DNA of 64,000 nt from Octopus sinensis (lineage: Eukaryota), in NCBI RefSeq assembly GCF_006345805.1, contig NC_043011.1, forward strand, positions 1,240,001 to 1,304,000, given 5' to 3'. This document shows, one piece after another, positions 5,366 to 42,401 of the stretch. Position 1 is the stretch's first letter. Each line of letters begins with the position of its first letter. Position numbers and translations under genes: made by a program. Under the pieces are notes generated by a model that worked only from the letters and a program-made list of their open reading frames with translations, was not told where the DNA came from and searched no databases.

Positions 5366-6099
5366 TAAGGCAAAGAAACTCACTGTATACATTGAAAGAT
5401 CATTAAATTAAACAGATTGTTCATTTACAAAATGAGGTTATATGCCCCCCACCCCAAAAAAAAACTAAAGTTACATTGGTGGTAATCATTCTCATAATGA
5501 CAATGCTCTTTTCAACATGTGTGATGTACCAGTTAAAACAATATTTTGCACTTCTTGCATGGGTGGTGAGCCAGGGATCATTCTCAATTATTTTCTGTGA
5601 ATATTCATGTTTTCACAAGTTTGAAATATTTTCATTTTGGATTCATTCATTTGTTCATCTTGTCATTTTACATTTTTTTCCTCATTCTAATGATTATTTT
5701 TCATTGAGGCATTATTTTACAGCCAGGTGTCATTCCTGTAGCTAATCCTTTCTTATTTTTCAAGTATGGGATTTTTTATTTATTCCATGTAACCTTTGAA
5801 AGTACAAGGAATGTCAATATAGCATTTACTGTTCATGCAAATGTGTAGAGTGTAAACATTGACACAAATACATTATGTGCACACACACACACACACACAC
5901 ATGCATCTCTCTATTTCTTTCTCTAGCTATCTATCTCTCAGTCTGTCTGTTTATCTATCTATATATTTATATATATATCAACAATCAAGGAACGGCCATA
6001 ATAGGCCATTCACCCACTAGAAATAACAGCCAAAGCTTCAACCGCAAATAAAAGTCAATTCCGTAAACAGGAGAAAATTTAAAAAACATTTACCCTGTA

Positions 6100-6206
6100 A
6101 TTTCTTATACGATGCACCGTTTCATCTGCTGTTTAATGGTAAACTAACCTGATTAAATTAAATCAAGCCAATCTTCCATAGGCCCTCAGATTCTTCAGTA
6201 AGAAAT
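6100..6206 (-). ncRNA. Mirror hammerhead ribozyme of element A
   Basis: Exact reverse complement of 6511-6617 in the left arm. Confidence 0.85.
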
Positions 6207-6510
6207 AGCCACAAGTCGGAACAGATATTTTCACGAGGCATTTCCGACCCTGCCAAGGTAATATCTGACCTAAAATTTTCAAATCATCGCACTCGCGCCA
6301 AATTTATCGGCAGCAAATAAATATAAGCCGTCGATTCCATTACGGAATTAACCAGAATTTTCTGGTTAATTCCGTAATGGAATCGACGGCTTATATTTAT
6401 TTGCTGCCGATAAATTTGGCGCGAGTGCGATGATTTGAAAATTTTAGGTCAGATATTACCTTGGCAGGGTCGGAAATGCCTCGTGAAAATATCTGTTCCG
6501 ACTTGTGGCT

Positions 6511-6617
6511 ATTTCTTACTGAAGAATCTGAGGGCCTATGGAAGATTGGCTTGATTTAATTTAATCAGGTTAGTTTACCATTAAACAGCAGATGAAACGG
6601 TGCATCGTATAAGAAAT
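6511..6617 (+). ncRNA. Type I hammerhead ribozyme with extended stem II
   Basis: Stem I ATTTCTTA(6511-6518)/TAAGAAAT(6610-6617); core CTGAAGA 6519-6525; stem II ATCTG(6526-6530)/CAGAT(6589-6593); GAAA 6594-6597; stem III ACG/CGT with GTGCAT loop; cleavage triplet GTA 6607-6609. Confidence 0.85.
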
Positions 6618-7101
6618 TACAGGGTAAATGTTTTTTAAATTTTCTCCTGTTTACGGAATTGACTTTTATTTGCGGTTGAAGCTTTGGCTGTTATTTCTAG
6701 TGGGTGAATGGCCTATTATGGCCGTTCCTTGATTGTTGATGTTGAACTTAAAAATGGTCTATGACTATTTAATTTTTTCCCACTAGGCCGCTGGTGGCAA
6801 AAAAATTCTACAAAATTTTTTTTGCCACCCTATATTGATTAATTATGTATTTATATATATATATAAACATTATACACACACAAACTCTCACACACCTATG
6901 AATATGCATGCACATGAGCATATGTATAGGGTTAGTCCACATTACTCTGTAAGGAGCACAGGACTGGTTTCCTGGTATATATTTGATCATCCCATAAATA
7001 ATGTCATTTTTTCAATTGCTTGAAGTAAAAGTCGGTGGGGGGGGGATAAACTACCTGCATCAACTTCTAGTTTCTATTTTCTCTTTGTAACATATTTCTA
7101 T

Positions 7102-7142
<41 letters not shown>

Positions 7143-7944
7143 TTGTGTGTATATGTATATATATGTGTGTGTGTGTGTGTGTGTATATGTATATGCATAT
7201 GAATACATATATACATACATACATATATATATATATGTATATATGGTGGTTGTCTACTCCTTATCCAGAGTTTGACCACCTCCTGTACCTACACCTTAGC
7301 ACTTTCATGGCATCTGATGTAGCTTTTTAAACCAGACAATGTTTTAAAAAGACACCCACATAGATTGCATATCAGATTTGGACCACCAAGAGTTGCAGAT
7401 AAGTTCTGATCTTTGTGGATCTTAAAATGTCTTTCAACACCTCCATTAGATTAACTGCAGAGTAATTTCCGATCTCAGCGTGCCAAAGTGAAGCCATTTG
7501 AAAGATACACATAAATATAATTTGTGGAACTTTATACATGCTAGATTTTGGTTGAGCGTTTCTGTGTCTAGTTCTGGAAATTGTACTTTTGTAAACGACA
7601 GACTATGCTGATGATCTTGCAGATGTTTGTGTATCCATATACATAAATATTAACAAGTGAAACTAATTAGTACATAGGTAATGGGTTTTTTTTATTTCGT
7701 ATATTTTCATTTGTCTAGCTTATTTTTACACTTTGGTTTTTTGTTGAATTTTTTCTTGAGAACACATTCTTCATGGAAAATGGTGATTTTGACGTCTATA
7801 TCTAGCATATAGTCTGTCCATTGTTTTTAGTGGTCAGTCAGTCCTCTAAATTTTGTATGTAAAAAAGATTTTTAATCTTCGGATATTTTAAAAAATATGC
7901 TAGTCCACTGGTTTCAATTGATTAATATCAATTTGTACCCTTAT

Positions 7945-7982
<38 letters not shown>

Positions 7983-9385
7983 TTACATACATACATACAG
8001 GCGTACTCCAGTGAGTCAATCCCCACCTCATATTGCTCTCTCCTCACACCATATCATCCCTGACCATCTTGATACCACTTTTCCCTCTTGCTACTTGGGT
8101 CCATCTCACATTTTAGCCATTCTCCATCCGTTGCTATTGTTCTCCTCACCCACATGTTACAGTGGACTTTTTCTTCTCCAGAGCATCTAATTATCTCTTC
8201 TCATGCATAATGCTTGTCTTATCTTTCTACTCCACTCCTGCAAACACTTCAGCAACACTTCAGCTCTCTCTCTCCTCTCCCTCATCAATGGTATCCTTAC
8301 TACAATACTCCTCGTAGCCCTGTAACCTCCCAAACTCACATCATCTCAATCCCACTAAGGCTGCCCACCTCTCTCTATTACTTCCTCCATCTCTTTCCTC
8401 ACACACTCTTGCAAATCCCCATTTACCTTATCATCACTGTCTATTTCCTTGGAGATTCCTCTAATTCATTCCCACACTCTCTCTCTCTCTCTCTCCTAAA
8501 TGTCACTAGCCCTCTAACTCCTACAATAAGGACCTGTTCTGTTCCTGCATCTTTCCTCCCTCCATCTAACATACAGAAGCAATATTCTTTCTCTCTGGGA
8601 TTGTTGCCTTGCAAGCCACATGATAACTCCAATAGTGCTGGTGGCATGAAAAATAAGCACCCAATATACACTGCAAAGTGGTTGGCATTAGGAAGGGCAT
8701 CCAGCCATAGAAACTATGCCAAAACAGACACGAGTGTATGATGCAGTCCTTAACTCATTGAATCCTTGTCAAACCATCCAACCCATGGAAGTATGGAATA
8801 TGGACATTAAAAGATAAGGATGATGATAGACATATCATGATAAGTTTCCATAAAGTTTTACTCACAAAGCACTAGTCAACCTGAAGTTGCCATAGAAGAT
8901 ACCTGCCCCAGGTGCCAATCATTGAGATAGAACTATAGAACTAGACACCATCTCGTTATGAAGTGAACTCTGTATTTACAGAACCTACCTGCTTATAAGA
9001 TGAAAAATGATTTGCAGGTTCGTTTTACCATCAGAGACTTTGGAACAACACCACCCAGCCTGTTTGAGGAAAGGAGAGCAGAAAGGTCTGGCTTTAGATA
9101 TTTTCAAATCTGTTGATATGCTGAGGAAACTGAGAAAAATTAATTGGGCTGGTGGGCAAAAGAGAAAACCTATTTGCTATATATGTGACAGTAAAGGTCC
9201 CTTAAAGATATAAATATGTTTATAAAATGACATTTTTTCATAAATGCTATGTTTTAATTTTGTTCAGTTATGATTGGCAGTGATGTTTTAAGTTTCTTTA
9301 CTAAGTTTGTGTGTATATGTTTATGCTTATTTTTTGACATAAACACGGAAAATGAAAACTTGAGACCATCACAATTTATAAAATA

Positions 9386-9518
9386 TTCTAATATATTACT
9401 TCGTTCTGTTTTTTGCAGGTAAGTCATCCTAGCTTTAACTTAACAAGGTGGATTACCATATTTATATAATCAGGATAACTTGAAATAAATTGGTGATATT
9501 ATCTAAAAGCAAGTAAGT
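9386..9518 (+). promoter_or_regulatory. Candidate recursive splice site (AG|GT at 9418/9419) with 94-nt cryptic exon to a donor at 9513
   Basis: TTCTAAT branch-like motif, TTCGTTCTGTTTTTTGCAG|GTAAGT, downstream AA|GTAAGT; stops in all three frames of 9419-9512. Confidence 0.5.
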
Positions 9519-9905
9519 TTCATATTTATATATTTTTTATTGATTGTTTTATATCAAGATGAATGCAAATTTTTAGTGGAGTGATCTTTTGCGATATTGT
9601 TAAAAACTGAATCTTACAGATGGTCAAGTTTATTGGGAGTTCAGTCAAATGACTATAAGATGACAGTACAGCACTCCATCTATATCCAGAATACTTATCT
9701 CCTTAAGGTCCAATCCATTTAGCTGCATGGAGGTTCCAATTTGACAGAACTAACCAACTGAAACAACAAAATTCACGTATAATTCTTGATTGTTTTGTTA
9801 ATTTACACTATTGGTTTCTAGTCTTGCCAAAGCTGAAATTGTTTTACCAAACCTAGAGTGTATATGGTATACTTGTTACTGTCTGTATGTCCTAATCTAT
9901 ACATG

Positions 9906-10217
9906 TTGTTGTTTGTTCCTTCTCGAGCCATGCCTGGCTCATAAGGGCCAGTTTCCCGGTTTCTTGGCGTATAGGTTCCCCACCTGGATGGGACGCCGGT
10001 CCGTCGCAGGTGAGCTGCAAGATGCAGGAGGAAAGAGTGAGAGAAAGTTGTGGCAAAAGAGTCAGCAGAAATTCACCATTACCTTCTGCCGGAGCCGCAT
10101 GGAGCTTAGGTGTTTTCGCTCATAAACACACACATCACCCGGTCTGAGATTCGAACCCGTGATCCCTCAACCGTGAGTCCGCTGCTCTAACCACTAGGCC
10201 ATGTGCCTCCACACATT
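9906..10217 (-). mobile_element. tRNA-derived SINE, family B (head related to family A)
   Basis: Reverse complement of 31589-31852; TSD CTATACATG (9897-9905, 10218-10226). Confidence 0.8.
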
Positions 10218-13144: not shown

Positions 13145-13486
13145 TGGCTGTTGCCAGCGCTGCCCTGACTGGCACATAAAAAGCACCATCCGATCATGGC
13201 CATTGCCAGCCTTGCCTGGCCCCTGTGCCGGTGGCATGTAAAAAGCACCATCCGATCGTGGCCATTTGCCAGCCTCGTCTGGCACCCGTGCCGGTGGCAT
13301 GTAAAAGCACCCACTTCACTCACGGAGTGGTTGGCGTTAGGAAGGGCATCCAGCTGTAGAAACATTGCCAGATCCGACTGGGCCTGGTGCAGCCTTCTGG
13401 CTTCCCAGACCCCAGTTAAACCGTCCAACCCATGCTAGCATGGAAAGGGGACGCTAAACGATGATGATAATGATGATGATGATGAT
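13145..13486 (+). mobile_element. RTE 3'-end fragment. Other copies: 2944-3030(-), 3139-3396(-), 8636-8830(+), 38507-38873(+), 50294-50600(-), 55330-55478(+), 56897-57530(-), 58030-58155(+), 58880-59020(+)
   Basis: All share GTGGTTGGCGTTAGGAAGGGCATCCAGC...CCAACCCATGCTAGCATGGAAA-(GAT)n with the RTE 3' end. Confidence 0.85.
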
Positions 13487-13800
13487 GTGTGTGTGTGTGT
13501 GTGTGTGCAGGGCTGGGTTTAAGCCAATTAGTTAAATTTGTTCAAATTGGGCCCCATGCCAAGAGAGGGTCCCTGTGCATGTGTTTCAGCAGAGGGCACG
13601 GTGATGAATTTTCAGTATACTGTTGTGGCTAATGGTGGAGCCTTATGTACTCAGTGCTTTTTGGCTGGGACTGGCATACTACATGAAGCATAAAACATCG
13701 GTCTTCAGCTTTTGTAGAGTAGAGGGCTCCACTGACAATTCTTTAACTGGGTCTTGCATTTCCTAACACTAACCTTGCATATATGTGTGTGCATTATACT

Positions 13801-18780: not shown

Positions 18781-18816
<36 letters not shown>

Positions 18817-19284
18817 AAGAGATGCATCTATATATAAATGTATATACATGTATATATAAAGGTGGAAGAGCTCATGAGTAGTCAACGGCCGTCCAACAAT
18901 ATGTACATGTGTATGTATGCATGTGTGTGCAGGGATGTGGAAATACCTGGGTTGGTGTCCAGCCACGTGGTTGGCTCACTAGGAGTGGGAGGCCTCCACA
19001 ACATCTCTCTAAGAGAGGGAAACTCTGAGAGAAAATCTGCAGCGCTGATTTGAGGATGTAGACTAGTTCTTCTTTTTGAGTTTATGCTCTCCATGTACAG
19101 AGAGGGAAATTGGATTTGTGCAAATCCTTTCCCCACTATAAAAAAAAATCATCAGGCACAGGCATCACCTGAAAAAAGTAGGACCTATCATAAAAATGGT
19201 TGATTGTAGTCTCTGTATGTGTGGGATGACAATACTCGAACATGAGTCTGTAGCCATCATATATATATATATATATATATATTT

Positions 19285-19484
19285 ATTTATTTTATAGAAG
19301 GAGCTTCTACAGGACTAGAACTGTTTCATTCAGATGAAATCTTCAGGAAGCTTCCTGAAGATTTCATCTGAATGAAACAGTTCTAGTCCTGTAGAAGCTC
19401 CTTCTATAAAATAAATTACTTTACTCTGCTATGTATTGAGTACCTTATTTACTGTGGTTAACCCCGACTCAACCCGGGACCTAC
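19285..19484 (+). mobile_element. Fold-back hammerhead element B: perfect 132-bp palindrome 19285-19416 plus 68-nt tail, between two (TA)n tracts
   Basis: Loopless palindrome centred on AAG|CTT at 19350/19351; (TA)n at about 19260-19281 and from 19485. Confidence 0.75.
19349..19399 (+). ncRNA. Type I hammerhead ribozyme (mirror copy on - strand at 19302-19352)
   Basis: Stem I AGCTTC(19349-19354)/GAAGCT(19394-19399); CTGAAGA 19355-19361; stem II TTCA/TGAA behind a T.T mismatch; GAAA 19374-19377; stem III ACAG/CTGT with loop TTCTAGTC; triplet GTA 19391-19393. Confidence 0.8.
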
Positions 19485-19727
19485 ATATATATATATATAT
19501 ATATATATGTATGAAAAATATTAGAAAAAAAACACCTTTTATCAATTCAAAATAAATAATTAAATTACACCATCTAGAAAATTACATATAATAGAAAAGT
19601 TAAAATTAAAATAACAATAAAAAGTAAAGATTAAGTAAATTACAAAAATTATAAAAATGTATATAATAGGTAGAAAAACATGTGTATGCAGGGATGTGGA
19701 AATATCTATATATATCTATATCTATCG

Positions 19728-19794
<67 letters not shown>

Positions 19795-19819
19795 AATCTA
19801 TATATCTATCTATATATCA

Positions 19820-22655
19820 GCCCTCAGCCCCCTTTTATTCATCATATTCCTCCAGGCAATAACAGAGGAATTCAAAACAGGTTGCCCCTGGGAGCTCCTC
19901 TATGCTGATGACCTGGCCCTCATAGCAGAATCACTACCGGAACTAAAAAAGAAATTTCGGATGAGGAAACAAGGGTTAGAATCTAAGGGCCTTAGAGTAA
20001 ATGTAGCGAAGACCAAAGTTATAGTATGCAGAAAGGCGAACTCAGTACACCCCCCATCGGGCAGATGGCCCTGCTCAAGCTGTAGGAAAGGTGTAGGTAG
20101 AAACTCCATAAGATGCACCCAGTGTAAGCTATGGACGCATAAGAGGTGCAGCAACATCAAAGGGAAATTAACTGATAAGATAGCTTTCATGTGCGGCAGA
20201 TGCAAAGGGACAATAGACACCACAGACACTCAAAAAACTGATTCCATCACACTCCAGGGGGATAAACTAGAAGTAGTTGATAGTTTTCGCTACCTGGGTG
20301 ACCAAGTTAGTAGTGGGGGTGGATGCTCAGAGAGTGTCACCACTAGAATACGAGTAGCCTGGGCAAAGTTTAGAAAGCTCCTACCCCTACTGGCGACAAA
20401 GGGTCTCTCACTCAGAGTGAAAGGTAGATTGTATGATGCATGTGTGCGAACTGCCATGCTTCACGGCAGTGAAACATGGGCCGTGACTGCAGAGGACATG
20501 CGTGGACTTGAAAGAAATGAAGCTAGCATGATCCGCTGGATGTGTAATGTCAGTGTGAAAGCACGACAGAGTGTAAGCACCCTGAGAGAAATGCTAGGCA
20601 TAAGAAGCATCAGATGCGGTGTGCAAGAGCGACGCTTGCGATGGTATGGTCATGTACTGCGGATGGATGAGGAGAGATGTGTGAAGAAGTGCCACTCCCG
20701 AACAGTTGAAGGAATCAGGGGGAGAGGTAGACCCAGGAAGACATGGGATGAGGTAGTCAAGCATGACCTCAGAGCGTTGAGCCTCACTGAGGCAATGGCG
20801 AAGGACCGAGACCTCTGGAGATGTGCTGTGACTACTAAGACCCGGGATGCTCCCGGCACCAGTTCCGCATAAGACACAGGATGCTCCCGGCACCAGTTCC
20901 GCATACCCCCTGCCCACCCAAAGTACCTTGGTTCCCGGAACATCTCGCTGTGCTTGAGGAGATCTGTCGAGTCAAGTGCATATACATGAACATCGAACCA
21001 AATATCAATGGAAACAGTAGTTATGATACCTGTGCCGGTGACACATAGAAAGCACCAACTGATCGTGGCCGTCGCCAGTGCAGCCTCCACTGGCTTCTGT
21101 GCCGGTGGCACATAAAAAGCACCATCCGAACGTGACCGATGCCAACTCCGCCTCGAATGGCTTCTGTGCCGGTGGCACATGAATATGAAACCAAATATCA
21201 ATGGAAACAGTAGTTGTGATACCTGTGCCGGTGACACATATAAAGCACGATCCGAACGTGGCCGTAGCCAGTGCACCCTCCACTGGCTTCTGTGCTGGTG
21301 GCACATAAAAAGCACCATCCGAACGTGACCGATGCCAACCCCGCCTCGAATGGCTTCTGTGCCGGTGGCACATGAATATCAAACCAAATATCAATGGAAA
21401 CAGTAGTTGTGATACCTGTGCCGGTGACACATATAAAGCACCGTCCGAACGAGGCCGTTGCCAGTGAAACCTCCGATGGCTTCTGTGCCGGTGGCACATA
21501 AAAAGCACCATCCGAACGTGATCGATGCCAACCCCGCCTCGAATGGCTTCTGTGCCGGTGGCACATGAATATCGAACCAAATATCAATGGAAACAGTAGT
21601 TGTGATACCTCAACCCCGCCTCGAATGGCTTCCATGCCGGTGGCACATGAATATCGAACCAAATATCAATGGAAACAATAGTTGTGATACCTGTGCCGGT
21701 GACACATAAAAAGCACCATCCGAACGTGGCCGTTGCCAGTGCAGCCTCCACTGGCTCTGTGCCGGTGGCACATAAAAAGCACCATCCGAACGTGACCGAT
21801 GCCAACCCCGCCTCGAATGGCTTCTGTGCCGGTGGCACATAAAAAGCAATGTCCGAACATGACCGATGCCAGCACCGCCCCGACTGGCTTAAAAAGCACC
21901 AACCGATCGTGGGATCCCGGAACATCTCGCTGTGCTTGAGGAGACCTGTTGAGTCAAGTGCATGAACGTGACCGATACCAACCCCGCCTCGAATGGGTTC
22001 TGTGCCGGTGGCACATAAAAAGCAACATCCGAACGTGGCCGATGCCAGCACCGCCCCGACTGGCTTCTGCGCCGGTGACACATGAATATCGAACCAAATA
22101 ACAATGGAAACAGTAGTTGTGATACCTCAACCCCCGCCTCGAATGGCTTCCGTGCCGGTGGCACATAAATGTTGAACCAAATATCAATGGAAACAGTAGT
22201 TGTGATACCTGTGCCGGTGACACATAAAAAGCACCATCTGAACGTGGCCATCGCCAGTGCAGCCTCCACTGGCTTCTGTGCCGGTGGCACATAAAAAGCA
22301 CCATCCGAACATGACCGATGCCAACCCCGCCTCGAATGGGTTCTGTGCCGGTAGCACATAAAAAGCAACATCCGAACGTGACCGATGCCAGCACCGCCTT
22401 GACTGGCTTCTGTGCTGGTAGCACAAAAAAAAAAAAAAAAGCACCAACTGATCGTGGCCGATGCCAGACCCCTCTGGCACCTGTGCAGGTGGCACGTAAA
22501 AAGCACCCACTACACTCGCGGAGTGGTTGGCGTTAGGAAGGGCATCCAGCTGTAGAAACACTGCCAGATCAGACTGGAGCCTGGGGCAGCCCCTGGCTCC
22601 CCAGACCCCGGTCGAACCGTCCAACCCGTGCTAGCGCGGAAAACGGACGTTAAAC

Positions 22656-22754: not shown

Positions 22755-22760
<6 letters not shown>

Positions 22761-23313
22761 GAAATATTACATTTCTAAATCTCTCAGAGAGACTTATACA
22801 GTAGCAGCATGATAAAGTGACGGTTTGTTACCAACTTAATGTGGCAGTCCCAGGAAAGGGAAGAATGCTACTGCTATTTAGCCCCAGGAAGCATCGTTTC
22901 CAGTTGGCTATGTGACACAAGCGTACTGTGTCCATAAGTTTTCAAACAGGGGTGATACGAACCTCCACCCAGGAAAGCCAGCATCCAGAGACTAGTTTCT
23001 GAATCATTGCTCTTGATCAGTTTGGAGTAGCTTGGCTTGCTAGCTGTCGATGCTTATTCGCCTTTGAAAACTTATAGCATTTCAAGTGAAATAAGTCCAC
23101 TGATCTACAAAATTAGAAATACTTTGTAGATCATAAATCTCTCACGCTTGTGTCACATAGCCAACTGAAAACGGTGTTTCCTGGGGCTAAATAGCAGAAG
23201 TATTCTTCCCTTTCCTGGGACTGCCACATTAAGTTGGCAACAAGCTGTCATTTTATTGTGCTGTTACTGTATAAGTCTCTCTGAAAGATTTAGAAATGCA
23301 ATATTTCTAATAT
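22755..23313. mobile_element. MITE / fold-back element with 170-bp terminal inverted repeats, next to (TA)n
   Basis: 22755-22924 and 23144-23313 are imperfect reverse complements; internal hairpin 23101-23133. Confidence 0.85.
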
Positions 23314-23319
23314 GCCTGT

Positions 23320-23750
23320 GGGCATATGGCGAAGTGGTTAAGAGTGCGGGCTACTAACCCCGAGATTCTGAGTTTGATTCCAGGCAGTGACCTGAATAAT
23401 AATAATAATAATAATATAACATAATTTTCGTTTTTTTTTTTAGACATTCACTAGTACAACACTAAATACAAAACCAAATATATGGCACACTAGGCATAAC
23501 AACAACACAAACTTCAACCTGTTGTCTCTTGAGGTCTCTGGGTGAGACTTGGAGCCAACTTGTACAAATATAAAGCAAAAGTCGAACATAGAATAATAAT
23601 AATAACAACATCGAAAAATACCTTAGGAATAAGAACCCAGGTTTGAAATTTTATCAAGACACCTGATGAAGGCCGGAGGGTATATCAGCTGAAATGTGTT
23701 AACAACAAAGATGAGAACAAATATCCGTCAATTGTAAATAATGTAATAAT
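23320..23750 (+). mobile_element. tRNA-headed SINE with (AAT)n linker and a decayed hammerhead-like motif in its 3' part
   Basis: A-box TGGCGAAGTGG 23327-23337; B-box GTTTGATTCC 23372-23381; (AAT)n interrupted by about 170 bp; ACAC-CTGATGA...GAAA-T-GTGT at 23659-23699. Confidence 0.6.
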
Positions 23751-30990: not shown

Positions 30991-31193
30991 GTGAGGTATA
31001 CTTGCCATCTCAATATGGCTAACCACTAAGGGTGGGTGTTACTGTTGCTTGTAGCCCCAGGAGAACATCGTCTTCAGCTGGCTTTAGAAAGTGTGCCTAA
31101 AGCCAGCTGGAGACGATGTTCTCCTGGAGCTACAAGCTACAGTAACACCCACCCTTAGTGGTTAGCCATATTGAGATGGCAAGTATACCTCAC
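30991..31193. repeat. 203-bp fold-back (97-bp arms, 9-nt loop, about 3 mismatches)
   Basis: Direct reverse-complement comparison; inner part resembles the TIR of 22755-23313. Confidence 0.9.
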
Positions 31194-31852: not shown

Positions 31853-33907
31853 TTATTAATGGCAGTGCATCAGCATGGCCACAGCTCTGAGCTGAAACTA
31901 AAAAAAAACTAAAAAAAAAAAAGTATTATATGACAAAGCAGTTCATGTCAGAGTCCATTACCCCATTTCATACATGGAATAACAAGAACAATGAATTTAT
32001 GGATTTCACTTCATGTAACTGATTAACCTGCAATCTATAAGTTGGCCTTGTAAAGGCTGACCTGAATCTATGCAACAACAACAATAATAAATATTGTGGC
32101 TATATAAAATAACAGAGGAAAAATATCACATTGCTGCAAAAGATATCAATTGTCATTATGAATAATGATCATTTTGAAAATGCAAAACTCAACACAACAG
32201 AACTGTAAATACAAACAAATGTTCCCATCAGAAAATCAAGTACAAAAATTTAGGAGAGATGAGAGATTTTAATCCTGTGACCCCTTACCTCCTTGGTACT
32301 ATTTGATTCTATGCCTGGATTCCAGAGCTATTTGTGCCCAGTTCTGACAGAGATTAGAAGCAAGGCTGTCATAAGGGTTAGTGTTAGGGTACATTATCAA
32401 AAGGTTATAATGCATGCAAACACATATGTACTTATCAATGTTTTAGTGCCAATATTCCTTCCACCTTGCTGTGCCAATCAGACCAGCATGTGGAACCCCT
32501 CTTGATGCACCAGAGGCATTTGGGTGGAATTTGTTGTAAAGAAATACTTATGGGATACTTTACTGATTTAAAAAAAGATATTTGCTTTGATGTGTGTTTT
32601 TTTTTTAAAGAAAAACACAATATCTATTTAAACCATTCAAGAAGTTCAAGAAAAAAATATATCTTCTTACATTAAGTAGCATAGAAGTTATATTTGATCA
32701 TCTGTGTCTGAAACATGTAGTAAAAACAAACTTGTATTCTCAATAACTCTGCTTTACTGCAAAGTTTTAGCAAAGATATCTGAGGATGGTAGAGCATCAA
32801 GACATGCTATATTTATAAATACATCAATGTATATATTTATCAAAGGATGTATGAAAATAAGCTCAGGAAGCATCATGGATGAATTATTTCATGTATCTTT
32901 GGAACAGCTTATTATATGAGTAATTCAAGATCATTACTGATCAAAATAGAATGATATCAGAAATTCTTGATTACTCTTTTTTTCTTTTACTTTTATACTT
33001 GTTTCAGTCATTTGACTGGGGCCATGCTGGAGCACCGCCTTTAATCGAGCAACTCGACCCCGGGACTTATTCTTTTGTAAGCCCAGTACTTATTCTATCG
33101 GCCTCTTTTGCCGAACCACTAAGTAACAGGGACATAAACACACCAGCATCGGTTGTCAAGCAATGCTAGAGGGACAAACACAGACACACAAACACATACA
33201 CACGCATATATATATATATACATATATACGATGGGCTTCTTTCAGTTTCCGTCTACCAAATCCACTCACAAGGCATTGGTCTGCCCAAGGTGCCATGCAG
33301 TGGGACTGAACCCGGAACCATGTGGTTGGTAAACAAGCTACTTACCACACAGCCACTCCTGCGCCTATTGGAAAAGAAATAGCAACATTAGAAATAGTAA
33401 AACAAGTTAGGAAAATAAAAATAAGAAAAACTTCTGACAATATTTCCACCAAAATTACCATGCACCTGACGAAAAATTTAAAAAAGAAACATACATAGTA
33501 TTGTTCAGTAAGATTTCAGTTGAATGCAGCTAATATTTTAAATGACAAACAAATTGATGGGTGTTTTTATGTTGCTCTCTGTAATACATTAGAAATGTAT
33601 ATGCCCAAATATGGAGAATTATGACATGGTAGCTGATTGGCAATAAAGCTATTTGGTTATTTAGAAAACGTTCAGATTGCATCACTTATTTTTTCAGTGA
33701 GTGAGTAGATGAATAGGGTTGATAGTATCAGCACTTAGCCATGTAAATAATATCGTGTATAATGTTTATGGTCAGTTGATTTGAATTAAGCCAATGTGAC
33801 ATATAGATTAAGGATAAGGAAAAAATATCTAGGAGTAAGCTCAAGAAAACCAAATAGTAAGGTTTGTGCTAACATACTTCATTAGTAATGAACTAATTTT
33901 AATTATA

Positions 33908-36213: not shown

Positions 36214-36683
36214 CATGGTGAGAAGAAAGAAGTAAAGCAAGAGAGACTCTTCTGAAATTTTAATTAATTAAGATTAATAAATCTTAGAAACAGAATGCTA
36301 GCAATTGAATGGGAAGTGAGTTTGAACTTGGCAGTATGATGTAAGTTTATAATTATTTTGATATTAATTTACCGTCCAACTTTTCAAAATTACATTTTCA
36401 CCAAAGAATACTGTTGTATGAAGGAAGTAAGGTAGATCAAAAGTTAAAGTTGTATGCATATAACATGACAATCATGGATAGGAAGGACTTAAGTACTGAT
36501 CTCTGAGGGAATAATTAGTTCATGATATACTGTAGATTTGAAGTTAAACAAGTAACAATAAAAAGATACAGCAAATATTAATGACAATTAAGGAAGAAAC
36601 AAGTGAAATTTTAAGGTAACCAGAGACTATATCAACCAAAATATATTTAAATAACACAAACAAAAGATGACAAATTGTTAATA

Positions 36684-37091
36684 TAGGCGCAGGAGTGGCT
36701 GTGTGGTAAGTAGCTTGCTAACCAACCACAGGGTTCCGGGTTAGGTCCCACTGTGTGGCACCTTGGGCAAGTGTCTTCTGCTATAGCCTCGGGCCGACCA
36801 ATGTCTTGTGAGTGGATTTGGTAGACGGAAACTGAAAGAAGCCCATCGTATATATGTATATATATATATGCGTGTGTGTGTTTGTGTGTCTGTGTTTGTC
36901 CCCTAGCATTGCTTGACAACTGATGCTGGTGTGTTTATGTCCCCGTTACTTAGCGGTTTGGCAAAAGAGACCAATAGAATAAGTACTGGGCTTACAAAAG
37001 AATAAGTCCTGGGGTCGAGTTGCTCGATTAAAGGTGGTGCTCCAGCATGGCCGCAGTCTAATGACTGAAACAAGTAAAAGAGTAAAGAGTA
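36684..37091 (+). mobile_element. SINE family C (tRNA-like head, internal TA/TG microsatellite, GAGTAAAA tail). Other copies: 32972-33367(-), 40462-40890(+), 42748-43156(+), 44502-44905(-), 56376-56765(-), 43480-44226(-, interrupted)
   Basis: At least seven mutually alignable copies in both orientations with shared head GGCGCAGGAGTGGCTGTGTGGTAAG. Confidence 0.85.
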
Positions 37092-37615
37092 TAACTAGAT
37101 TTTGTTGGATAATTCTTTGAGGAATAAAAATGTAAAGTAATATCTAAAACGAGATTTAAAAAGCAACTACATTGACTAATTTTGTTATTCTTATGACATA
37201 AGTACTTAGAAGGGGTAGGATAAACTATTATATTATATGATTTTATTCATGATGATCATTTCCATAAATCATTTATACCAATGTATAAATGATTATTTCC
37301 TGGTTTTTCATAATGACTGATGCCAAATTTATTTCCCTATCAGGAACATCTAAAGCTTGAAATTCATGTAGATTTATGTATTCCCTCAAGATGACAAGCT
37401 GATGAGAAACAGAGGCAACAATAAAATAAAGAATATATATGAAATTAGTGTTTTAGTTTTAACCAATGAAGCCTGTACTATTTGGACAATCTTTACAGTA
37501 AATTGTAATCATAAATGTCACTTTGAGCCTCAGAGGGTAATGATATTGTTGTTTGGTTCCAAATTCAATTACATTAACCAGTTGAGAGATAATTATTACT
37601 GTCAGTTTCTCACAG

Positions 37616-37717
37616 GTATCAATCCCAGATGATTTTATATGCATTCTTCCAGAAATAGGTGAACTGAAGTATGTTGATATAAGTTTCAATTTGCCTAGGG
37701 ATAATGAAAAGCCTGCA
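37616..37717 (+). CDS. Candidate coding exon (VSIPDDFICILPEIGELKYVDISFNLPRDNEKPA), product unknown
   Basis: Acceptor TTTCTCACAG, open frame, phase-0 donor CA|GTAAAT (weak; alternative AA|GTATGT at 37669). Confidence 0.35.
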
Positions 37718-39179
37718 GTAAATAGTGAATATGAACTCACAAGCATGAAGTCGATAGTTATAGTTACTATATTAACTCGCTATTTCAGACAGACTTTTCA
37801 GTCAAAGAACTAATTAAATAATTTCAAATTCTGGAGCCAAGTTAAATCTTGAGCAATTGAAGGTTAAAATTTACGATCAGTGTTAGTGCCACTGTAAATG
37901 GAGACATTATAACCTGACAGTAGATTTAAATGATATGAATAATATTAAGTGCAAGTTTATGGATTGTACTTTAATGATACTCTTGACACAGCTGTATCTG
38001 CACCAACAGTTAATTAGCCTATAATTCATATGATAAGTGTGATGGATGCAAAAGACTTACTCACTTTTACCGATTGAGAAGAAATTAGTTTCATCAGTAG
38101 CCAACTAAAATATTAAGTTACACCCAAATTATCATGCAGTTATTATTTTAGTTCATCATGTCACTTCTAATTATAGGTTAGCTTTTATTGTTTATTCAAA
38201 AAATTCTTATTACAATGTTTTCATTTTTTTTTTCTTGGCAATAATTGTATTTAGGAAATATATAACTACAAGAGAGAGAAAATCGTCAGAAGTGTTGTAG
38301 TTTTAGGTGTTGACTCTATGTAGAACTTTACTGAGAATATATTACTTCAGGTTTGTCATACTGTAATACAGCCTTCAGTTAAACATATGTAAGATGTACA
38401 TAATGTATCTCATGTGATAGAATGAACTGTAAAAGTTGTTATATATATATACTAATACACACAAACATACAAACACTCATAGAGAAATATATACATACAT
38501 ATACAAATCAAAATCGAAATCGATCAACATTAATGGAAATTGCAGCTGTGATACCAGTGCCGGTGGTATGTAAGTGAACCATCCAAACGTGGCCATTGCC
38601 AGTGCCGCCCCAACTGACCTCGTGCCGGTGGCACGTAAAAAGCACCATCCGATCGTGGCCGTTTGCCAGCCTCGTCTGGCACCTGTGCCGGTGGCACGTA
38701 AAAAGCACCCACTACACTCACGGAGTGGTTGGCGTTAGGAAGGGCATCCAGCCATAGAAACATTGCCAGATCAGACTGGGCCTGGGTGCAGCCTTCTGGC
38801 TTCCCAGACCCCAGTTGAACTGTCCAACCCATGCTAGCATGGAAAGCGGACTCTAAACGATGATGATGATGATACACATACACATCCACAGAGAGGTGAA
38901 AAAGCAATCCTAGAACATAGAAGTATGAAATTAAATATACTAGTCCAGCATTGTACCCAGGTGGTTATAAATATTCATTTTCATTTTAGAAAAGCTCTTT
39001 GCTGTCAATACTCAGGCCATGAGTGTGGTGTATGCGAGAGATTCAAAATAAAGGCACCTACCTTCTCTTCGCTCAGACGAAGACCTTTCAGCGGTAATGG
39101 ATCCTTCAATGCAGCCTGACCTGAACACTAGAAATAGCAGCTGCTTCTCCCCTACCTTAACAACGTGCTCACGCGTATT

Positions 39180-39325
39180 ACTCTCTCGGCGACCTCGATC
39201 AAAAAAGGCCGAATCCTGCCCTGCCTGTGCGCGTGTCACTCCTGCCCTGCCTGTGCGCGTGTCACTCCTGCCCCTTCCGGTCAGCCCCAAGTTCCGGTCA
39301 GATCCCCAGCTGCTGACGTCATCCC
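39180..39325. promoter_or_regulatory. CpG-rich promoter-like island (CRE site, two ETS-like sites, 26-bp tandem duplication)
   Basis: TGACGTCA 39314-39321; TTCCGGTCAG twice (about 39275 and 39292); - strand donors AG|GTAGGG (39155) and AG|GTAGGT (39061). Confidence 0.4.
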
Positions 39326-39385
39326 ACAATGAGAAGTTATAAATAAAATGTCCAAAACCATCATTATAATTTCTATTGTTTTCAG

Positions 39386-39577
39386 GCAGGGGTTTCCATA
39401 TTAGGTGAGTTTTTGAGTGTTATCATATTTAAAACAGGGAAACAGTAAAAAGCTATCTAGGAATAGTTATGCAGTTAGAAAAAAAAATATTAATGATATA
39501 TTATTTTCATTTTTCCAGAAATTTCAGAAGACAACTCCATACATGTTTTGGACTTAGACCTCTTCAGCAATACATAA
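39386..39577 (+). CDS. Candidate 19-nt micro-exon (39386-39404) plus terminal exon (39519-39577): AGVSILEISEDNSIHVLDLDLFSNT*
   Basis: TTTCTATTGTTTTCAG|19 nt|GTGAGT and TTATTTTCATTTTTCCAG|; phases are compatible and join in frame. Confidence 0.45.
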
Positions 39578-40622
39578 GCTTCATTGTACTAATGAACAAA
39601 TCAATTAATCAATACAAGATTATACATGACCTGGTGTAGGAAAATAGAATTGCTTAGAAAATAATTCATGGAATTCATCTGCATGAAAAACAATAGTTGA
39701 ATTTGTATTAACATATATAATATAGGGGCATAAAATAATTAGATATGATAATATGATGAAAAAAGAATATTGGTTAATATATAATATTATTTTCATGTGT
39801 CCATGTTAGTTAGATTTAGAAAGATCTGCAGTATTTTATGTACATTTAGGCTCAGTTTCTTCATAGCTGCAGGAAACATCTTCCATAATTTTAGTAAGCA
39901 TGCAATAATTTTCTTTTGTAGCTACGTATCACTTTTAAAACTTTCAGCACCTTTCTTTAGCCATCATTTGTCAATTATATATCTAAATCTATTGAAGGTA
40001 TGCTTTATTTATTTTTTTTTTGAACAAAACTCAGATTGTCCTCTTGCACAAATGAACATTTTTCTATTATTTTCTTTACTAATATAACTAACAACATTTT
40101 GTAAAATTATTAGTTAAAATGTCTTTGAGAGTCAAAGTGAATTTCAGAAACTATGAAATATGTTGTATAAAATTATATTAGGCTATATATTTGGACTAAA
40201 TATCTTTAGCATTCTACCAATTTTCATACCTTATTGAAGTGAATGCCATTACCTCTTGAGAAGAATAATCAATTGAAAAATCAAGAAGGTTGTAAAGATT
40301 ATAATGAAAAAAAAAAAGAAAAAACAATTACAGTTAAGAAGGAAATTTAATCAAATATTCATTTTAATCTCAGTTGTTGAAATTTTTACAGTTTTATTAA
40401 ATTTTGCAGTGTCAAAAAAATTTTCTGCAATAATTTTAACTATATCTAATTTTAACTATGTAGCAGCATGCATGGCTGTATGGTAAAAAGCTTGCTTCCC
40501 AACCACATGGTTTGAAGGTTCAATCCAACTATGTGGCACTTTAGACAAGTATCTTCTATAACCTTGGGCCAACCAATGCTTCGTGGGTGGATTTGTTAGA
40601 TGGAAACTGAAAGAAGCCTGTC

Positions 40623-40662
<40 letters not shown>

Positions 40663-41180
40663 GTGTGTGTGTGTGTTTGTGTTCTGTGTTTGTCTCCTGC
40701 CACTGCTTGACAACCAGTATTGGTGTGTTTACATCCCTGTAACTTAGCAGTTCTTAAAAAAAGATGATAGAATGAATAGCAAGCTTGGCAGAAAAGAAAA
40801 AAGTATTGGGGTTGATTCATTTGACTAAACATTCTCCAAGACAGTGCCCTGGCATGCCCACAATTTAATGACTGAAGCAAGTAAAAGATAAATTCTTGTT
40901 GTGTCTAGGGAGGGTCAAAAATGAAATAAATGATAAAATATATCTTTTTATTTTCTTGATTTATTTTGCTTTTTAAAGTTTCATTTTTTTTTTCTTTTCA
41001 TAGATATTTTTTCCACAGTTTTGTGTTTGTTCATTAAAAGATAGGAACAAATTTCATATTTGAATCATGACAGAAATGGAATTTTCCCGGAAGATTTAGC
41101 ACTTCAGTCACTAAAAATCTATTTCTACTCATCTACTGTAGAAATTACTAGTTGATGAGAATTGGAATTGAATGACATGC

Positions 41181-41219
<39 letters not shown>

Positions 41220-41737
41220 TATGGTTGTTTCTGTGTGTGTATATAAGCATATTTAATCACAACTATATACATAATTGAAGGTACATACACAAATAGTGAT
41301 GTAATAACAAACATGCACACATAAACAATTGGATTCTCATAAATGTTTACTATCAAATCAATTCACATGCACGTGCAATTCACATACACATGTAGCAATG
41401 TATGTTGACACATGTATGATCATAATAAAAATAGAAAACTAAACAAAAATTCCAGCCAACAAACATTTCCAGATATACAGATTATTAATAATACATGTTC
41501 ACAGGAAAAAATATATGCACAAACATCTCACCACAAATTTCTATAGAACAATGGCTTGTGTAATACTGCTGGAGGTGGAGAACATAAAAGGAGGAAATTT
41601 TTCATCTATCTACAAAATACTCAACAGTTGGCAGTGTTTAATCAGAGAATAGCTAGGTAGCTACTGCATCCAAATACTACTGTTACAACTCGGTACATTG
41701 TTATATTGGTACCAATATACTTTAATTGAAGAATTTT

Positions 41738-41769
<32 letters not shown>

Positions 41770-41771
<2 letters not shown>

Positions 41772-42128
41772 GGAGTAAACACATAAATGTGAAACAAGGT
41801 GGAAAAAAGAGTACTCAAATACCAGTGGTAGAGTAATATGCTTTATTTTAAGCAGCAGAAAATTCAACAAAATCTGTTACTCTGAGTTTCTCGTTGCCGT
41901 TCATCAGACAGTTTTTGCTAGAATGGAACTGATATATCAATTCAATCTAGACTCTTACAAACGCTACACCTTTAAAAAGAAATGGACTTCTTTTTAAAGG
42001 TGTAGCGTTTGTAAGAGTCTAGATTGAATTGATATATCAGTTCCATTCTAGCAAAAACTGTCTGATGAACGGCAACGAGAAACTCAGAGTAACAGATTTT
42101 GTTGAATTTTCTGCTGCTTAAAATAAAG
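41770..42128 (-). mobile_element. Fold-back hammerhead element C: perfect 288-bp palindrome 41841-42128 plus 71-nt tail 41770-41840, between two (TA)n tracts
   Basis: 141-bp arms with 6-nt loop ATGGAC (41982-41987). Tail lies on the left, so the element sense is the - strand. Confidence 0.75.
42052..42101 (+). ncRNA. Minimal type I hammerhead ribozyme (mirror copy on - strand at 41868-41917)
   Basis: Stem I CTGT(42058-42061)/ACAG(42092-42095), extended by CAAAA/TTTTG after one mismatch; CTGATGA 42062-42068; stem II CG-GCAA-CG behind an A.A mismatch; GAAA 42079-42082; near-palindromic stem III ACTC-A-GAGT; triplet GTA 42089-42091. Confidence 0.75.
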
Positions 42129-42150
42129 TATATATATATATATATATATA

Positions 42151-42400
42151 TATAATCAAAATAAGCAACAAAAATATCTTCGGTAATTTGGTATGATCGT
42201 TTCACACTACATCATTTTATTAAACATTGTAAGTTTAATAAAATGATGTAGCGTGAAACAATCGTACCAAATTACCGAAGATATTCTTGTTGCTTATTTT
42301 GATTATAATCACCCCATAGATTTATATGGATAACACTGTACAAAATTCTGGTGCATCTGACTTAAGTACCATATTCATTTGAATCTAAATTTTGCCGAAC

Positions 42401-42401
<1 letters not shown>
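42151..42401 (+). mobile_element. Older fold-back element D: imperfect inverted repeat 42151-42307 plus 94-nt tail, between (TA)n tracts
   Basis: 75-bp arms, 7-nt loop, four transition mismatches. Only the 3' half of a hammerhead-like core (GAAAC-GATC-GTA consensus of the two arms) is present. Confidence 0.55.

What the first reader, a model, noticed from the sequence alone, without database searches (positions are those of the whole stretch)
5977..42401. System: ORF-less, (TA)n-embedded fold-back elements carrying outward-facing pairs of hammerhead ribozymes
Seen: three perfect palindromes (764, 132 and 288 bp) of largely different sequence each hold a type I hammerhead in both arms. All three, plus an imperfect fourth, share the layout (TA)n-arm-tiny loop-arm-unique 68-111 nt tail-(TA)n. 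In all three the + strand ribozyme is in the right arm, so a transcript from either strand makes the antisense arm first and can trap the ribozyme in a long hairpin. Established: Penelope-like elements carry type I hammerheads in their pseudo-LTRs, often with self-complementary stem III loops, and can have an inverted 5' pLTR copy; non-autonomous hammerhead retrozymes exist in animals. Inference: these are several families of miniature Penelope-dependent elements targeting (TA)n. The inversion would act as a safety catch, turning a self-cleaving intronic insert into dsRNA (ADAR or small-RNA substrate) and sparing the host pre-mRNA.
Basis: partly seen in the sequence, partly recalled or inferred. 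Interest (0 to 1): 0.92.

Follow-up and report, generated by a model that had tools for sequence, protein, structure and literature searches.

The report
Truncated Penelope-type retroelement palindromes in (TA)n
Three perfect DNA palindromes sitting in TA-repeat tracts of an animal genome do carry hammerhead-ribozyme-like motifs, but their whole layout matches the already described insertion scar of Penelope-like retrotransposons, so this is a neat example of a known kind of element, not a new system.

Summary
Perfect palindromes of 764, 132 and 288 bp and a fourth with 95% matching arms each lie between (TA)n tracts. Each has a 0-7 nt centre and a 68-111 nt unique tail on one side.

Each perfect palindrome holds a motif with the full hammerhead core, three helices and a GUA cut site. 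A non-palindromic (TA)n-bounded insert (7237-7951) holds a fourth. My descriptor finds 5 loci, against 0.25 hits per shuffled window.

The motifs are non-canonical. Where G10.1-C11.1 should close helix II they have U.U, A.A or A-U. No Rfam hammerhead model matches them, even on 66-101 nt pieces.

A, B and C are diverged relatives. Their palindrome centres fall at different homologous positions, which is what variable 5' truncation gives.

Published Penelope-like element (PLE) insertions show the same set of features: AT-rich or (TA)n target, head-to-head inverted copy, palindromic junction, one-sided tail and a hammerhead in the terminal repeat. A purified PLE protein cuts and extends both DNA strands and starts reverse transcription at two internal sites.

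Best reading (0.68): dead-on-arrival or non-autonomous PLE-type insertions, with the palindrome a by-product of integration. The "safety catch" idea is untested. No partner element could be searched for.

The parts
5968..5978 (.). Left (TA)n flank of element A (short, imperfect further left)
   Evidence: sequence
5977..6740 (.). Element A: perfect 764-bp palindrome, arms 5977-6357 and 6360-6740, 2-nt centre
6511..6617 (+). Hammerhead-like motif of A in the right arm. Helix I AUUUCUUA/UAAGAAAU, core CUGAAGA, helix II AUCUG...CAGAU enclosing a 58-nt hairpin, GAAA, helix III ACG-GUGCAU-CGU, predicted cut after A6609. The mirror copy on the minus strand is at 6100-6206.
   Evidence: the fold keeps helices I and II (z -3.2)
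6741..6851 (+). Unique 111-nt tail of A, with a 13-bp stem-loop (GGUGGCAAAAAAA...UUUUUUUGCCACC) about 22 nt from the 3' junction
6852..6865 (.). Right (TA)n flank of A
7237..7951 (+). Element F: a 715-bp non-coding insert between (TG/TA)n at 7102-7236 and (TA)15 at 7952-7981. It has no palindrome.
7603..7677 (+). Hammerhead-like motif of F. Helix I CUAUG/CAUAG, core CUGAUGA, U.U then CUUG/CAAG enclosing a hairpin, GAAA, fully palindromic helix III ACUAAUUAGU, predicted cut after A7672.
19259..19282 (.). Left (TA)12 flank of B
19285..19416 (.). Element B: perfect 132-bp palindrome with no loop
19349..19399 (+). Hammerhead-like motif of B. Helix I AGCUUC/GAAGCU, core CUGAAGA, U.U then UUC-AUCU-GAA, GAAA, helix III ACAG-UUCUAGUC-CUGU, predicted cut after A19393. 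The mirror copy on the minus strand is at 19302-19352.
19417..19484 (+). Unique 68-nt tail of B. It is homologous to the tail of C (TTACTCT..TTGAGTAC) and ends in an A/C-rich stem-loop.
19485..19508 (.). Right (TA)n flank of B
41741..41769 (.). (TA)n flank next to the tail of C
41770..41840 (-). Unique 71-nt tail of C. The element reads on the minus strand: antisense arm, loop, sense arm, tail.
41841..42128 (.). Element C: perfect 288-bp palindrome, 6-nt loop at 41982-41987
41874..41911 (-). Hammerhead-like motif of C in the arm that adjoins the tail. Helix I CUGU/ACAG, core CUGAUGA, A.A then CG-GCAA-CG, GAAA, helix III ACU-CAG-AGU, predicted cut after GUA. The mirror copy on the plus strand is at 42058-42095.
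42129..42154 (.). (TA)13 tract shared by C and D
42151..42307 (.). Element D: imperfect palindrome, 75-nt arms 95% complementary, 7-nt loop. The hammerhead core is not intact (AUGAUGU..GUGAAAC).
42308..42401 (+). Unique 94-nt tail of D
42402..42436 (.). Right (TA)n flank of D

Best explanation
What it is. These are retro-insertions of the Penelope-like element (PLE) type into (TA)n microsatellites. Each is either a heavily 5'-truncated copy of a longer PLE or a copy of a non-autonomous RNA that a PLE enzyme mobilises. They are not a new kind of element.

Proposed mechanism.
1. A GIY-YIG endonuclease / reverse transcriptase complex cuts the AT-rich target on both strands.
2. [quoted passage not shown]
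3. The short cDNA is joined head to head with a second copy. This happens either by self-priming (snap-back) or by priming from the second cut strand followed by a template switch. Both routes give a perfect palindrome with a 0-7 nt centre.
4. One copy starts at the distal start site and the other at the proximal one. The sequence between the two sites therefore survives on one side only, as the 'tail'.
5. The hammerhead-like motif is inherited from the terminal repeat of the parent element, so it faces outward in both arms.

Consequence. In a read-through transcript the long hairpin would prevent the ribozyme fold. I take that to be a by-product of integration, not a selected function.

Shown here: the anatomy, the excess of hammerhead-like motifs, the homology among A, B and C, the different truncation points, and the shared arm/tail boundary of B and C.

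Inferred from the literature: every enzymatic step, and the identity of the partner element.
For: Anatomy.
- Exact palindromes, tails and (TA)n flanks.
- No coding capacity in A or F.

Hammerhead-like motifs.
- 5 loci against 0.25 hits expected per shuffled window.
- The four good motifs all lie inside (TA)n-bounded inserts, which make up about 5% of the window.
- In every case the sense motif is in the arm that adjoins the tail, so the two copies meet head to head.

Relatedness and boundaries.
- A and C are homologous (z 6.4), but the palindrome centre of C aligns about 150 nt inside the arm of A. That indicates variable 5' truncation, not a defined 5' end.
- The tails of B and C are homologous (p about 0.007), and their arm/tail boundary falls in the same alignment column. 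Fixed alternative RT start sites would give this.
- Each tail has a stem-loop near its 3' end.

Literature.
- PMC3846280: an ORF bounded by pLTRs plus an adjacent inverted pLTR, a 31-bp tail at one end, palindromes at the inverted junction, head-to-head as the commonest arrangement, and AT-rich targets.
- PMC8557442: high 5' truncation, an inverted 5'-truncated copy, a 30-40 bp tail, (TA)n preference, and non-autonomous derivatives that share 3' ends with autonomous families.
- PMC11167929: a purified PLE protein cuts and extends both strands of AT-rich DNA and starts RT at two internal sites in a stem-loop; the tail is the sequence between those sites. The hammerhead cut site lies about 85-92 nt upstream of the RT start. 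Here the distance from the predicted cut to the element end is 91 nt in B and 108 nt in C.
- PMC4209133: PLE hammerheads are type I, with a short helix III and a palindromic loop 3. Here the loops hold UGCA (A) and CUAG (B), and helix III of F (ACUAAUUAGU) is fully palindromic.
Against: - No RT or GIY-YIG reading frame lies in the window, and no autonomous partner could be looked for. Assignment to PLEs therefore rests on architecture, not on homology.
- The tails are 68-111 nt, against the published 30-40 nt.
- The motifs lack the G10.1-C11.1 pair that PMC4209133 reports as highly conserved, and no Rfam hammerhead model detects them. They may be inactive, or a different variant.
- In A, the region homologous to the hammerhead of C has a mutated core (CAGAUGA). 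The motif I score in A uses another CUGAAGA 70 nt upstream. That is odd for simple inheritance.
- (TA)n tracts in this window also flank an unrelated SINE-like repeat, so (TA)n embedding is not specific to these elements.
- The shared B/C boundary lies in an A/T-rich stretch, so microhomology with the (TA)n target could also explain it.
Confidence: 0.68

Rival explanations
1. This is a dedicated family of miniature, non-autonomous fold-back retroelements. The arm-loop-arm-tail unit is itself the element. The inversion is regenerated or kept at each cycle and is selected because it locks the ribozyme into dsRNA.
For: - Three independent perfect palindromes all keep an intact hammerhead-like core, whereas the older, 95% palindrome D has lost it.
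- B and C share the same arm/tail boundary despite diverged sequence.
- The hairpin is far more stable than the ribozyme fold: -108.8 against -10.5 kcal/mol.
- Non-autonomous PLE derivatives exist: Chlamys MRC1 in PMC8557442, and animal retrozymes as PLE derivatives in bioRxiv 10.64898/2026.07.22.740005.
Against: - The palindrome centres of homologous A and C lie about 150 nt apart, and arm lengths are 66, 141 and 381 nt. There is no defined unit.
- Element F carries the motif without any inversion.
- Head-to-head inverted copies with palindromic junctions are a routine by-product of PLE integration.
- There are no data here on expression, RNA editing or small RNAs.
- Perfect arms are expected for any young insertion whose two arms were copied from one template.
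Confidence: 0.1
2. The palindromes are products of DNA-level repair. (TA)n tracts form cruciforms and break, and the break is healed by fold-back (hairpin) synthesis that copies captured or neighbouring DNA into an inverted duplication. On this view the hammerhead-like motifs only mark the captured repeat, or are fortuitous.
For: - All four palindromes lie in (TA)n tracts.
- The centres are tiny, 0-7 nt, as in fold-back priming.
- Short microhomologies with the TA repeat lie at the arm/tail boundaries of C and D.
- Another palindrome, at 30991-31193, has neither a (TA)n flank nor a hammerhead-like motif, so palindromes can form here by other routes.
Against: - It does not explain why all three perfect palindromes, and the non-palindromic insert F, carry a full hammerhead core at 20 times the chance rate.
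- It does not explain why A, B and C are homologous although they lie 13-22 kb apart.
- It does not explain why the sense motif always adjoins the tail.
- The inserted sequences have no other copy in the window to be copied from.
Confidence: 0.1
3. The palindromes are assembly or sequencing artefacts, that is, fold-back chimeric long reads or mis-joined (TA)n tracts.
For: - PLE inverted and tandem structures are known to trouble assemblies (PMC8557442).
- Perfect palindromes with tiny loops are what a missed sequencing adapter produces.
Against: - There are four loci of different sequence. Each is internal to a 64-kb contig with unique flanks on both sides, and each has an asymmetric unique tail.
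- One of them (D) is 5% diverged between its arms, which an artefact would not be.
- PMC3846280 argues from small-RNA polarity that such PLE structures are real.
Confidence: 0.04
4. They are DNA transposons: MITE or foldback elements with TA target-site duplication, or Helitron derivatives that insert at AT.
For: - TA targets are typical of Tc1/mariner MITEs, and a genuine MITE with 170-bp inverted repeats abuts another (TA)n tract at 22755-23313.
- The tails have 3' stem-loops that superficially resemble Helitron ends.
Against: - The one-sided 68-111 nt tail breaks the terminal symmetry that a MITE needs.
- The ends are not 5'-TC...CTRR-3'.
- There is no internal region between the arms.
- Hammerhead-like motifs are not a feature of these classes (my own knowledge).
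Confidence: 0.04

Closest known systems
Endonuclease-positive Penelope-like elements (Penelope/Poseidon, Neptune and Naiad clades): their insertion architecture
   Same: - AT-rich or (TA)n target.
- Strong 5' truncation.
- Head-to-head inverted copy with a palindromic junction.
- An extension ('tail') at one end only.
- A type I hammerhead-like motif about 90-110 nt upstream of the 3' end in B and C.
- A stem-loop at the 3' end.
(PMC3846280, PMC8557442, PMC11167929, PMC4209133)
   Different: - No RT/GIY-YIG frame, and no direct pLTR pair.
- The whole insert is only 200-875 bp.
- The tail is 68-111 nt, not 30-40 nt.
- The hammerhead-like motif lacks G10.1-C11.1 and fails the Rfam models.
- Homology to a real PLE was not tested.
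Minimal and atypical PLE hammerheads (Cervera and de la Pena 2014) and the 'HHR_core' motifs of Naiads (Craig et al. 2021)
   Same: - Type I topology, a short helix I and a short helix III with a palindromic loop.
- Extreme sequence variability between families.
- In B and C the spacing between CUGANGA and GAAA is 12 and 10 nt, within the 7-17 nt 'HHR_core' definition.
- Naiads prefer (TA)n.
   Different: - Published min-HHRs keep G10.1-C11.1 and have one extra nucleotide only on the 5' side of helix II.
- Here there is a symmetric 1x1 position (U.U, A.A, U.U, or an A-U pair) between the core and helix II.
- A and F carry 58-nt and 34-nt hairpin insertions in helix II.
Animal non-LTR retrozymes (Cervera and de la Pena 2020; Li et al. 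2026 preprint)
   Same: They are ORF-less, AT-rich short repeats with type I hammerheads, and are proposed to be non-autonomous derivatives of PLE terminal repeats.
   Different: - Retrozymes are head-to-tail tandem repeats, so one transcript has two sense ribozymes and can release a circular monomer.
- Here the two copies are inverted, so any transcript has only one sense ribozyme, and that one is trapped in a hairpin.
L1 5' inversions by twin priming, and snap-back cDNA synthesis
   Same: An inverted 5' segment is made during target-primed reverse transcription, and microhomology is used at the junctions.
   Different: Twin priming inverts a neighbouring, non-duplicated part of the RNA (my own knowledge). 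Here the two arms are exact duplicates of the same segment.

Membership tests
Hammerhead ribozyme, type I | Conserved core nucleotides (C3 U4 G5 A6 N7 G8 A9, G12 A13 A14, A15.1-U16.1, H17) | tested here: met
   All are present in A, B, C and F, each with a GUA cut site. D has no intact core.
Hammerhead ribozyme, type I | Three helices around the core, with helix I open-ended | tested here: met
   Helix I is 4-8 bp, helix II 2-5 bp and helix III 3-5 bp. Helices II and III are closed by loops. The descriptor itself demanded pairing. In B and C the minimum-free-energy fold of a single arm is not the hammerhead fold.
Hammerhead ribozyme, type I | G10.1-C11.1 pair closing helix II next to the core | tested here: not met
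   The position holds U.U (B), A.A (C), U.U (F) and A-U (A). PMC4209133 reports G10.1-C11.1 as highly conserved, even in minimal PLE hammerheads.
Hammerhead ribozyme, type I | Match to a curated covariance model (the Rfam hammerhead families) | tested here: not met
   No hammerhead family is listed at gathering score or at E<=10 on the whole window, or on pieces of 66-931 nt.
Hammerhead ribozyme, type I | Self-cleavage at the predicted site | not testable with these tools
   This needs in vitro transcription of a single arm, a dimer and a full palindrome, with core mutants as controls.
Penelope-like element (insertion of, or mobilised by) | Reading frame with a telomerase-like RT and a GIY-YIG endonuclease | tested here: not met
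   A and F have no open frames. The only RT-like frames in the window have the LINE-type YADD motif with a PHD finger, and there is no GIY..YIG motif. A 5'-truncated or non-autonomous copy would be expected to lack the frame.
Penelope-like element (insertion of, or mobilised by) | Inverted (head-to-head) terminal-repeat copy with a palindromic junction | tested here: met
   The sense motif is always in the arm next to the tail.
Penelope-like element (insertion of, or mobilised by) | [quoted passage not shown] | tested here: met
   One-sided tails of 111, 68, 71 and 94 nt, longer than the published 30-40 nt.
Penelope-like element (insertion of, or mobilised by) | Preference for AT-rich or (TA)n targets | tested here: met
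   All five inserts are bounded by (TA)n tracts. The same is true of an unrelated SINE-like repeat, so the feature is not specific.
Penelope-like element (insertion of, or mobilised by) | Sequence homology of the 3' end to an autonomous PLE of the same genome | not testable with these tools
   The source genome and Repbase/Dfam are not available. Pattern scans of public viral and metagenome contigs found nothing relevant.
Non-LTR retrozyme | Head-to-tail tandem repeats, each with a sense hammerhead | tested here: not met
   The copies are inverted, not tandem. F has a single motif and no direct repeat longer than 14 nt.
MITE / foldback DNA transposon | Symmetric terminal inverted repeats reaching both ends, flanked by a target-site duplication | tested here: not met
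   One end is a 68-111 nt unique tail with no counterpart at the other end.
Helitron | 5'-TC ... CTRR-3' termini with a 3' subterminal hairpin, inserted between A and T | tested here: not met
   The 3' ends read ..GTATT..CCTAC..CTCCGG and ..GAACG. Only A could start with TC.

The most novel reading that the evidence does not exclude
The arm-loop-arm-tail unit is a genuine small fold-back retroelement. Its inversion is rebuilt at every integration and is kept because it silences a lineage-specific hammerhead variant. That variant has a symmetric 1x1 position in place of G10.1-C11.1. Read-through or intronic transcripts would then become long dsRNA (a substrate for editing or small-RNA pathways) and would not be self-cleaved.
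Probability: 0.07. Interest if true: 0.7.

Novelty: new member of a known kind. Interest (0 to 1): 0.3.

Why it matters
- The loci are compact, clean natural examples of the PLE integration scar: two-strand priming or self-priming, two RT start sites, and a (TA)n target. They could help to test the model drawn from the single in vitro PLE system. In particular, the shared arm/tail boundary of B and C predicts a fixed proximal RT start site.
- The recurring hammerhead-like design without G10.1-C11.1 is invisible to the Rfam models. If it cleaves, metazoan hammerhead counts based on those models are underestimates.
- For genome annotation, perfect palindromes inside (TA)n tracts should be read as retroelement scars, not as microRNA precursors. 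The only Rfam matches here, all below the gathering score, are to miRNA hairpin models.

Tried and rejected
- Rfam at gathering score and at E<=10, on the whole window and on five sub-regions, listed no hammerhead family. It listed only sub-threshold miRNA-type hairpin matches caused by the palindromes.
- A strict descriptor that required a paired 10.1-11.1 position and a helix II segment (hairpin including loop) under 60 nt missed A, B and C. This is how the non-canonical helix II came to light.
- Identifying the organism failed. Two window ORFs are not on record. The LINE RT has at best 70% identity, to a protein from a metagenome scaffold, and about 52% to cnidarian proteins.
- Looking for other copies failed. 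A tail-motif pattern in viral contigs gave no hit. In metagenome contigs it gave three hits that lack any hammerhead and look like chance. Exact core strings from A, B and C gave no hit in viral contigs.
- Supplementary consensus sequences of Craig et al. 2021 are not held as text.
- A and F looked related by eye in their tails (CTAG.CC.CTGGT plus a hairpin), but the alignment score is not above shuffles (p 0.27), so I dropped that claim. D shows no significant similarity to the others.
- The hit at 19117-19160 (minus strand) has a weak U-G helix II, a one-pair helix III and a UUU cut site. I treat it as the roughly one-in-four chance hit expected per window.
- Helitron, MITE and retrozyme membership were each tested and rejected (see the membership test).

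Full report
1. SETTING

The window is AT-rich animal DNA (about 32-45% G+C), full of microsatellites and transposon debris.
- A LINE-type RT frame with a PHD finger lies at 19682-20872.
- A mariner-like frame lies at 53624-54481.
- A MITE with 170-bp inverted repeats lies at 22755-23313.
- A SINE-like repeat occurs several times.

No RT of the Penelope type and no GIY-YIG motif was seen in any frame of 70 aa or more. The organism could not be identified.

2. THE OBSERVATION

It holds. Extending outward from the centres gives perfect palindromes at 5977-6740 (A, 764 bp, 2-nt centre), 19285-19416 (B, 132 bp, no loop) and 41841-42128 (C, 288 bp, 6-nt loop). An imperfect one lies at 42151-42307 (D, 75-nt arms, 95%).

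Each is bounded by (TA)n tracts. Each has a unique tail on one side only: 111, 68, 71 and 94 nt. In C the tail is on the left. Read on the minus strand, C therefore has the same order as the others: (TA)n, arm, loop, arm, tail, (TA)n. C and D share one (TA)13 tract and point away from each other.

3. THE RIBOZYME CLAIM

3a. What the curated models say. Rfam lists no hammerhead family, neither at gathering score nor at E<=10. This is true on the whole window and on pieces as short as 66-101 nt.

3b. What a descriptor finds. The descriptor asked for CUGANGA, a helix II hairpin (allowing one mismatch at 10.1/11.1), GAAA, a helix III closed by A15.1-U16.1, H17, and a helix I of at least 4 bp. It finds 8 hits at 5 loci, against a mean of 0.25 per dinucleotide-preserving shuffle (maximum 3 in 200 shuffles).
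- Three loci are the three perfect palindromes.
- The fourth (7603-7677) lies in a further (TA)n-bounded, non-coding, non-palindromic 715-bp insert, F.
- The fifth (19117-19160, minus strand) is weak and is probably the chance hit.

The four good motifs all cut after GUA. All lie in (TA)n-bounded inserts, which cover about 5% of the window.

3c. Shared oddity. All four share one non-canonical trait. Where G10.1-C11.1 should be they have U.U, A.A, U.U or A-U. A and F also carry long hairpins inside helix II.

3d. Conclusion on the motifs. They are real and hammerhead-like. They are not canonical, and their activity is unknown. That each palindrome has one motif in both arms follows trivially from its symmetry.

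4. RELATEDNESS

The palindromes are not unrelated.
- A and C align over about 145 nt including the motif region (score 82 against 38.5 +/- 6.8 for shuffles).
- The tails of B and C align (TTACTCT..TTGAGTAC, p about 0.007).

Two details matter.
- The palindrome centre of C aligns with a point 150 nt inside the arm of A, and the arm of B is shorter still. The inner ends are therefore variable, as with 5' truncation.
- In B and C the boundary between arm and tail falls in the same alignment column, just after AAAAUAAA. This outer boundary looks fixed, although an A/T-rich microhomology with the target could also produce it.

One oddity remains. The site in A that is homologous to the core of C reads CAGAUGA. 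The motif scored in A instead uses a CUGAAGA 70 nt upstream, together with the GAAAC that overlaps that dead core.

5. WHAT IT IS

The published anatomy of Penelope-like element (PLE) insertions fits point by point.
- Arkhipova et al. 2013 (PMC3846280) describe an ORF bounded by pseudo-LTRs plus an adjacent inverted pseudo-LTR. They also describe a 31-bp tail on one end only, palindromes at the inverted junction, head-to-head as the commonest orientation, AT-rich targets, and self-priming as the likely cause.
- Craig et al. 2021 (PMC8557442) add high 5' truncation, (TA)n preference in Naiads and Neptune, 'HHR_core' motifs that escape descriptors, and non-autonomous derivatives that share only 3' ends with autonomous families.
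- Frangieh et al. 2024 (PMC11167929) show that a purified PLE protein cuts and extends both strands of AT-rich DNA. It starts reverse transcription at two internal sites in a stem-loop, and the tail is the sequence between those sites. Their ribozyme cut site lies about 85-92 nt upstream of the RT start. Here the predicted cut lies 91 nt (B) and 108 nt (C) from the element end.
- Cervera and de la Pena 2014 (PMC4209133) describe PLE hammerheads as type I with a short helix III and palindromic loops. Here the loops hold UGCA (A) and CUAG (B), and helix III of F (ACUAAUUAGU) is fully palindromic.

6. MECHANISM I COMMIT TO (confidence 0.68)

A PLE enzyme complex cut a (TA)n tract. It began cDNA synthesis near the 3' end of a hammerhead-bearing template and stopped after 134-492 nt. 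The short cDNA was then doubled head to head, either by self-priming or by second-strand priming with a template switch. Because one copy starts at the distal site and the other at the proximal site, a one-sided tail is left.

The arms are identical because both derive from one template and the insertions are young. D, at 95%, is older and has lost its core.

The anatomy and the statistics are shown here. The enzymology is taken from the literature. The partner element is unknown.

7. THE 'SAFETY CATCH'

A transcript of palindrome B folds into a perfect hairpin of -108.8 kcal/mol. The single arm reaches only -10.5 kcal/mol, and not in the hammerhead fold. The ribozyme would indeed be masked. 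That is a consequence of the geometry. Nothing here shows that it is selected, and F shows that the motif also occurs without an inversion.

These inserts cannot run the retrozyme circular-RNA cycle, because any transcript contains only one sense motif.

8. RIVALS

- A dedicated fold-back family with a selected safety catch (0.10).
- DNA-level fold-back repair at fragile (TA)n tracts (0.10). This does not explain the motif excess or the homology among loci 13-22 kb apart.
- Assembly artefact (0.04). This is unlikely given the asymmetric tails, the unique flanks and the diverged copy D.
- MITE or Helitron (0.04). The ends and the symmetry do not fit.

9. VERDICT

It describes a known insertion architecture and not a new system.

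The modest points of novelty are the consistent hammerhead-like variant without G10.1-C11.1, the long tails, and the very small size of the inserts.

Interest 0.3; new member of a known kind.

Noticed in passing
window 30991-31193: A fifth palindrome: 97-nt arms, 97% complementary, 9-nt loop. It has no (TA)n flanks, no evident tail and no hammerhead-like core. Its origin is unknown.
   Followed up: partly
window 22755-23313: A MITE-like element with 170-bp terminal inverted repeats (92%) and a 219-bp centre. It directly abuts a (TA)18 tract. A sequence that looks tRNA-like by eye, ending in (AAT)n, follows at about 23310-23420. ARAGORN calls no tRNA anywhere in the window.
   Followed up: partly
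window 50292-50601 (also about 22184-22624 and 38530-38907): A SINE-like repeat (..GTTTAACGTCCGTTCTCCATGCTAGCATGGGTTGGACGG..), preceded by (CAT)n, is also embedded between two long (TA)n tracts. (TA)n embedding is therefore not peculiar to the hammerhead-bearing inserts.
   Followed up: partly
window 20984-22431: A G+C-rich minisatellite with periods of 66-67, 82-83 and 193 bp lies just downstream of the LINE RT frame. It creates many spurious long ORFs on the minus strand.
   Followed up: partly
window 6511-6625 and 41911-41984 (minus strand): In A the core homologous to that of C is mutated (CAGAUGA, GAAAU), yet a complete alternative hammerhead-like motif is formed with an upstream CUGAAGA. 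The hairpin inside helix II of A is homologous to the hairpin upstream of the motif in C. This may be turnover of the ribozyme within one lineage, or coincidence.
   Followed up: partly
window 33221-33235 and 36842-36856: CATATATACGATGGG and its reverse complement, each next to a (TA)n/(CA)n tract, bracket a 3.6-kb segment that holds LINE RT fragments. A similar junction, CATATATACGACAAG, follows the tract at 56585-56595.
   Followed up: no
window 18799-19258: A 460-bp segment between (GA)n(TA)n and the (TA)n tract that also flanks B. It holds the weak minus-strand hammerhead-like hit at 19117-19160. Whether it is an insert is unclear.
   Followed up: partly
window 53624-54481 and 19682-20872: A mariner-like transposase frame (285 aa) and a LINE RT frame with a PHD finger (396 aa). 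The best database match for the RT is 70% identity, to a protein from a metagenome scaffold, and the nearest named relatives are cnidarian (about 52%). The source species seems to be absent from the protein collection.
   Followed up: partly
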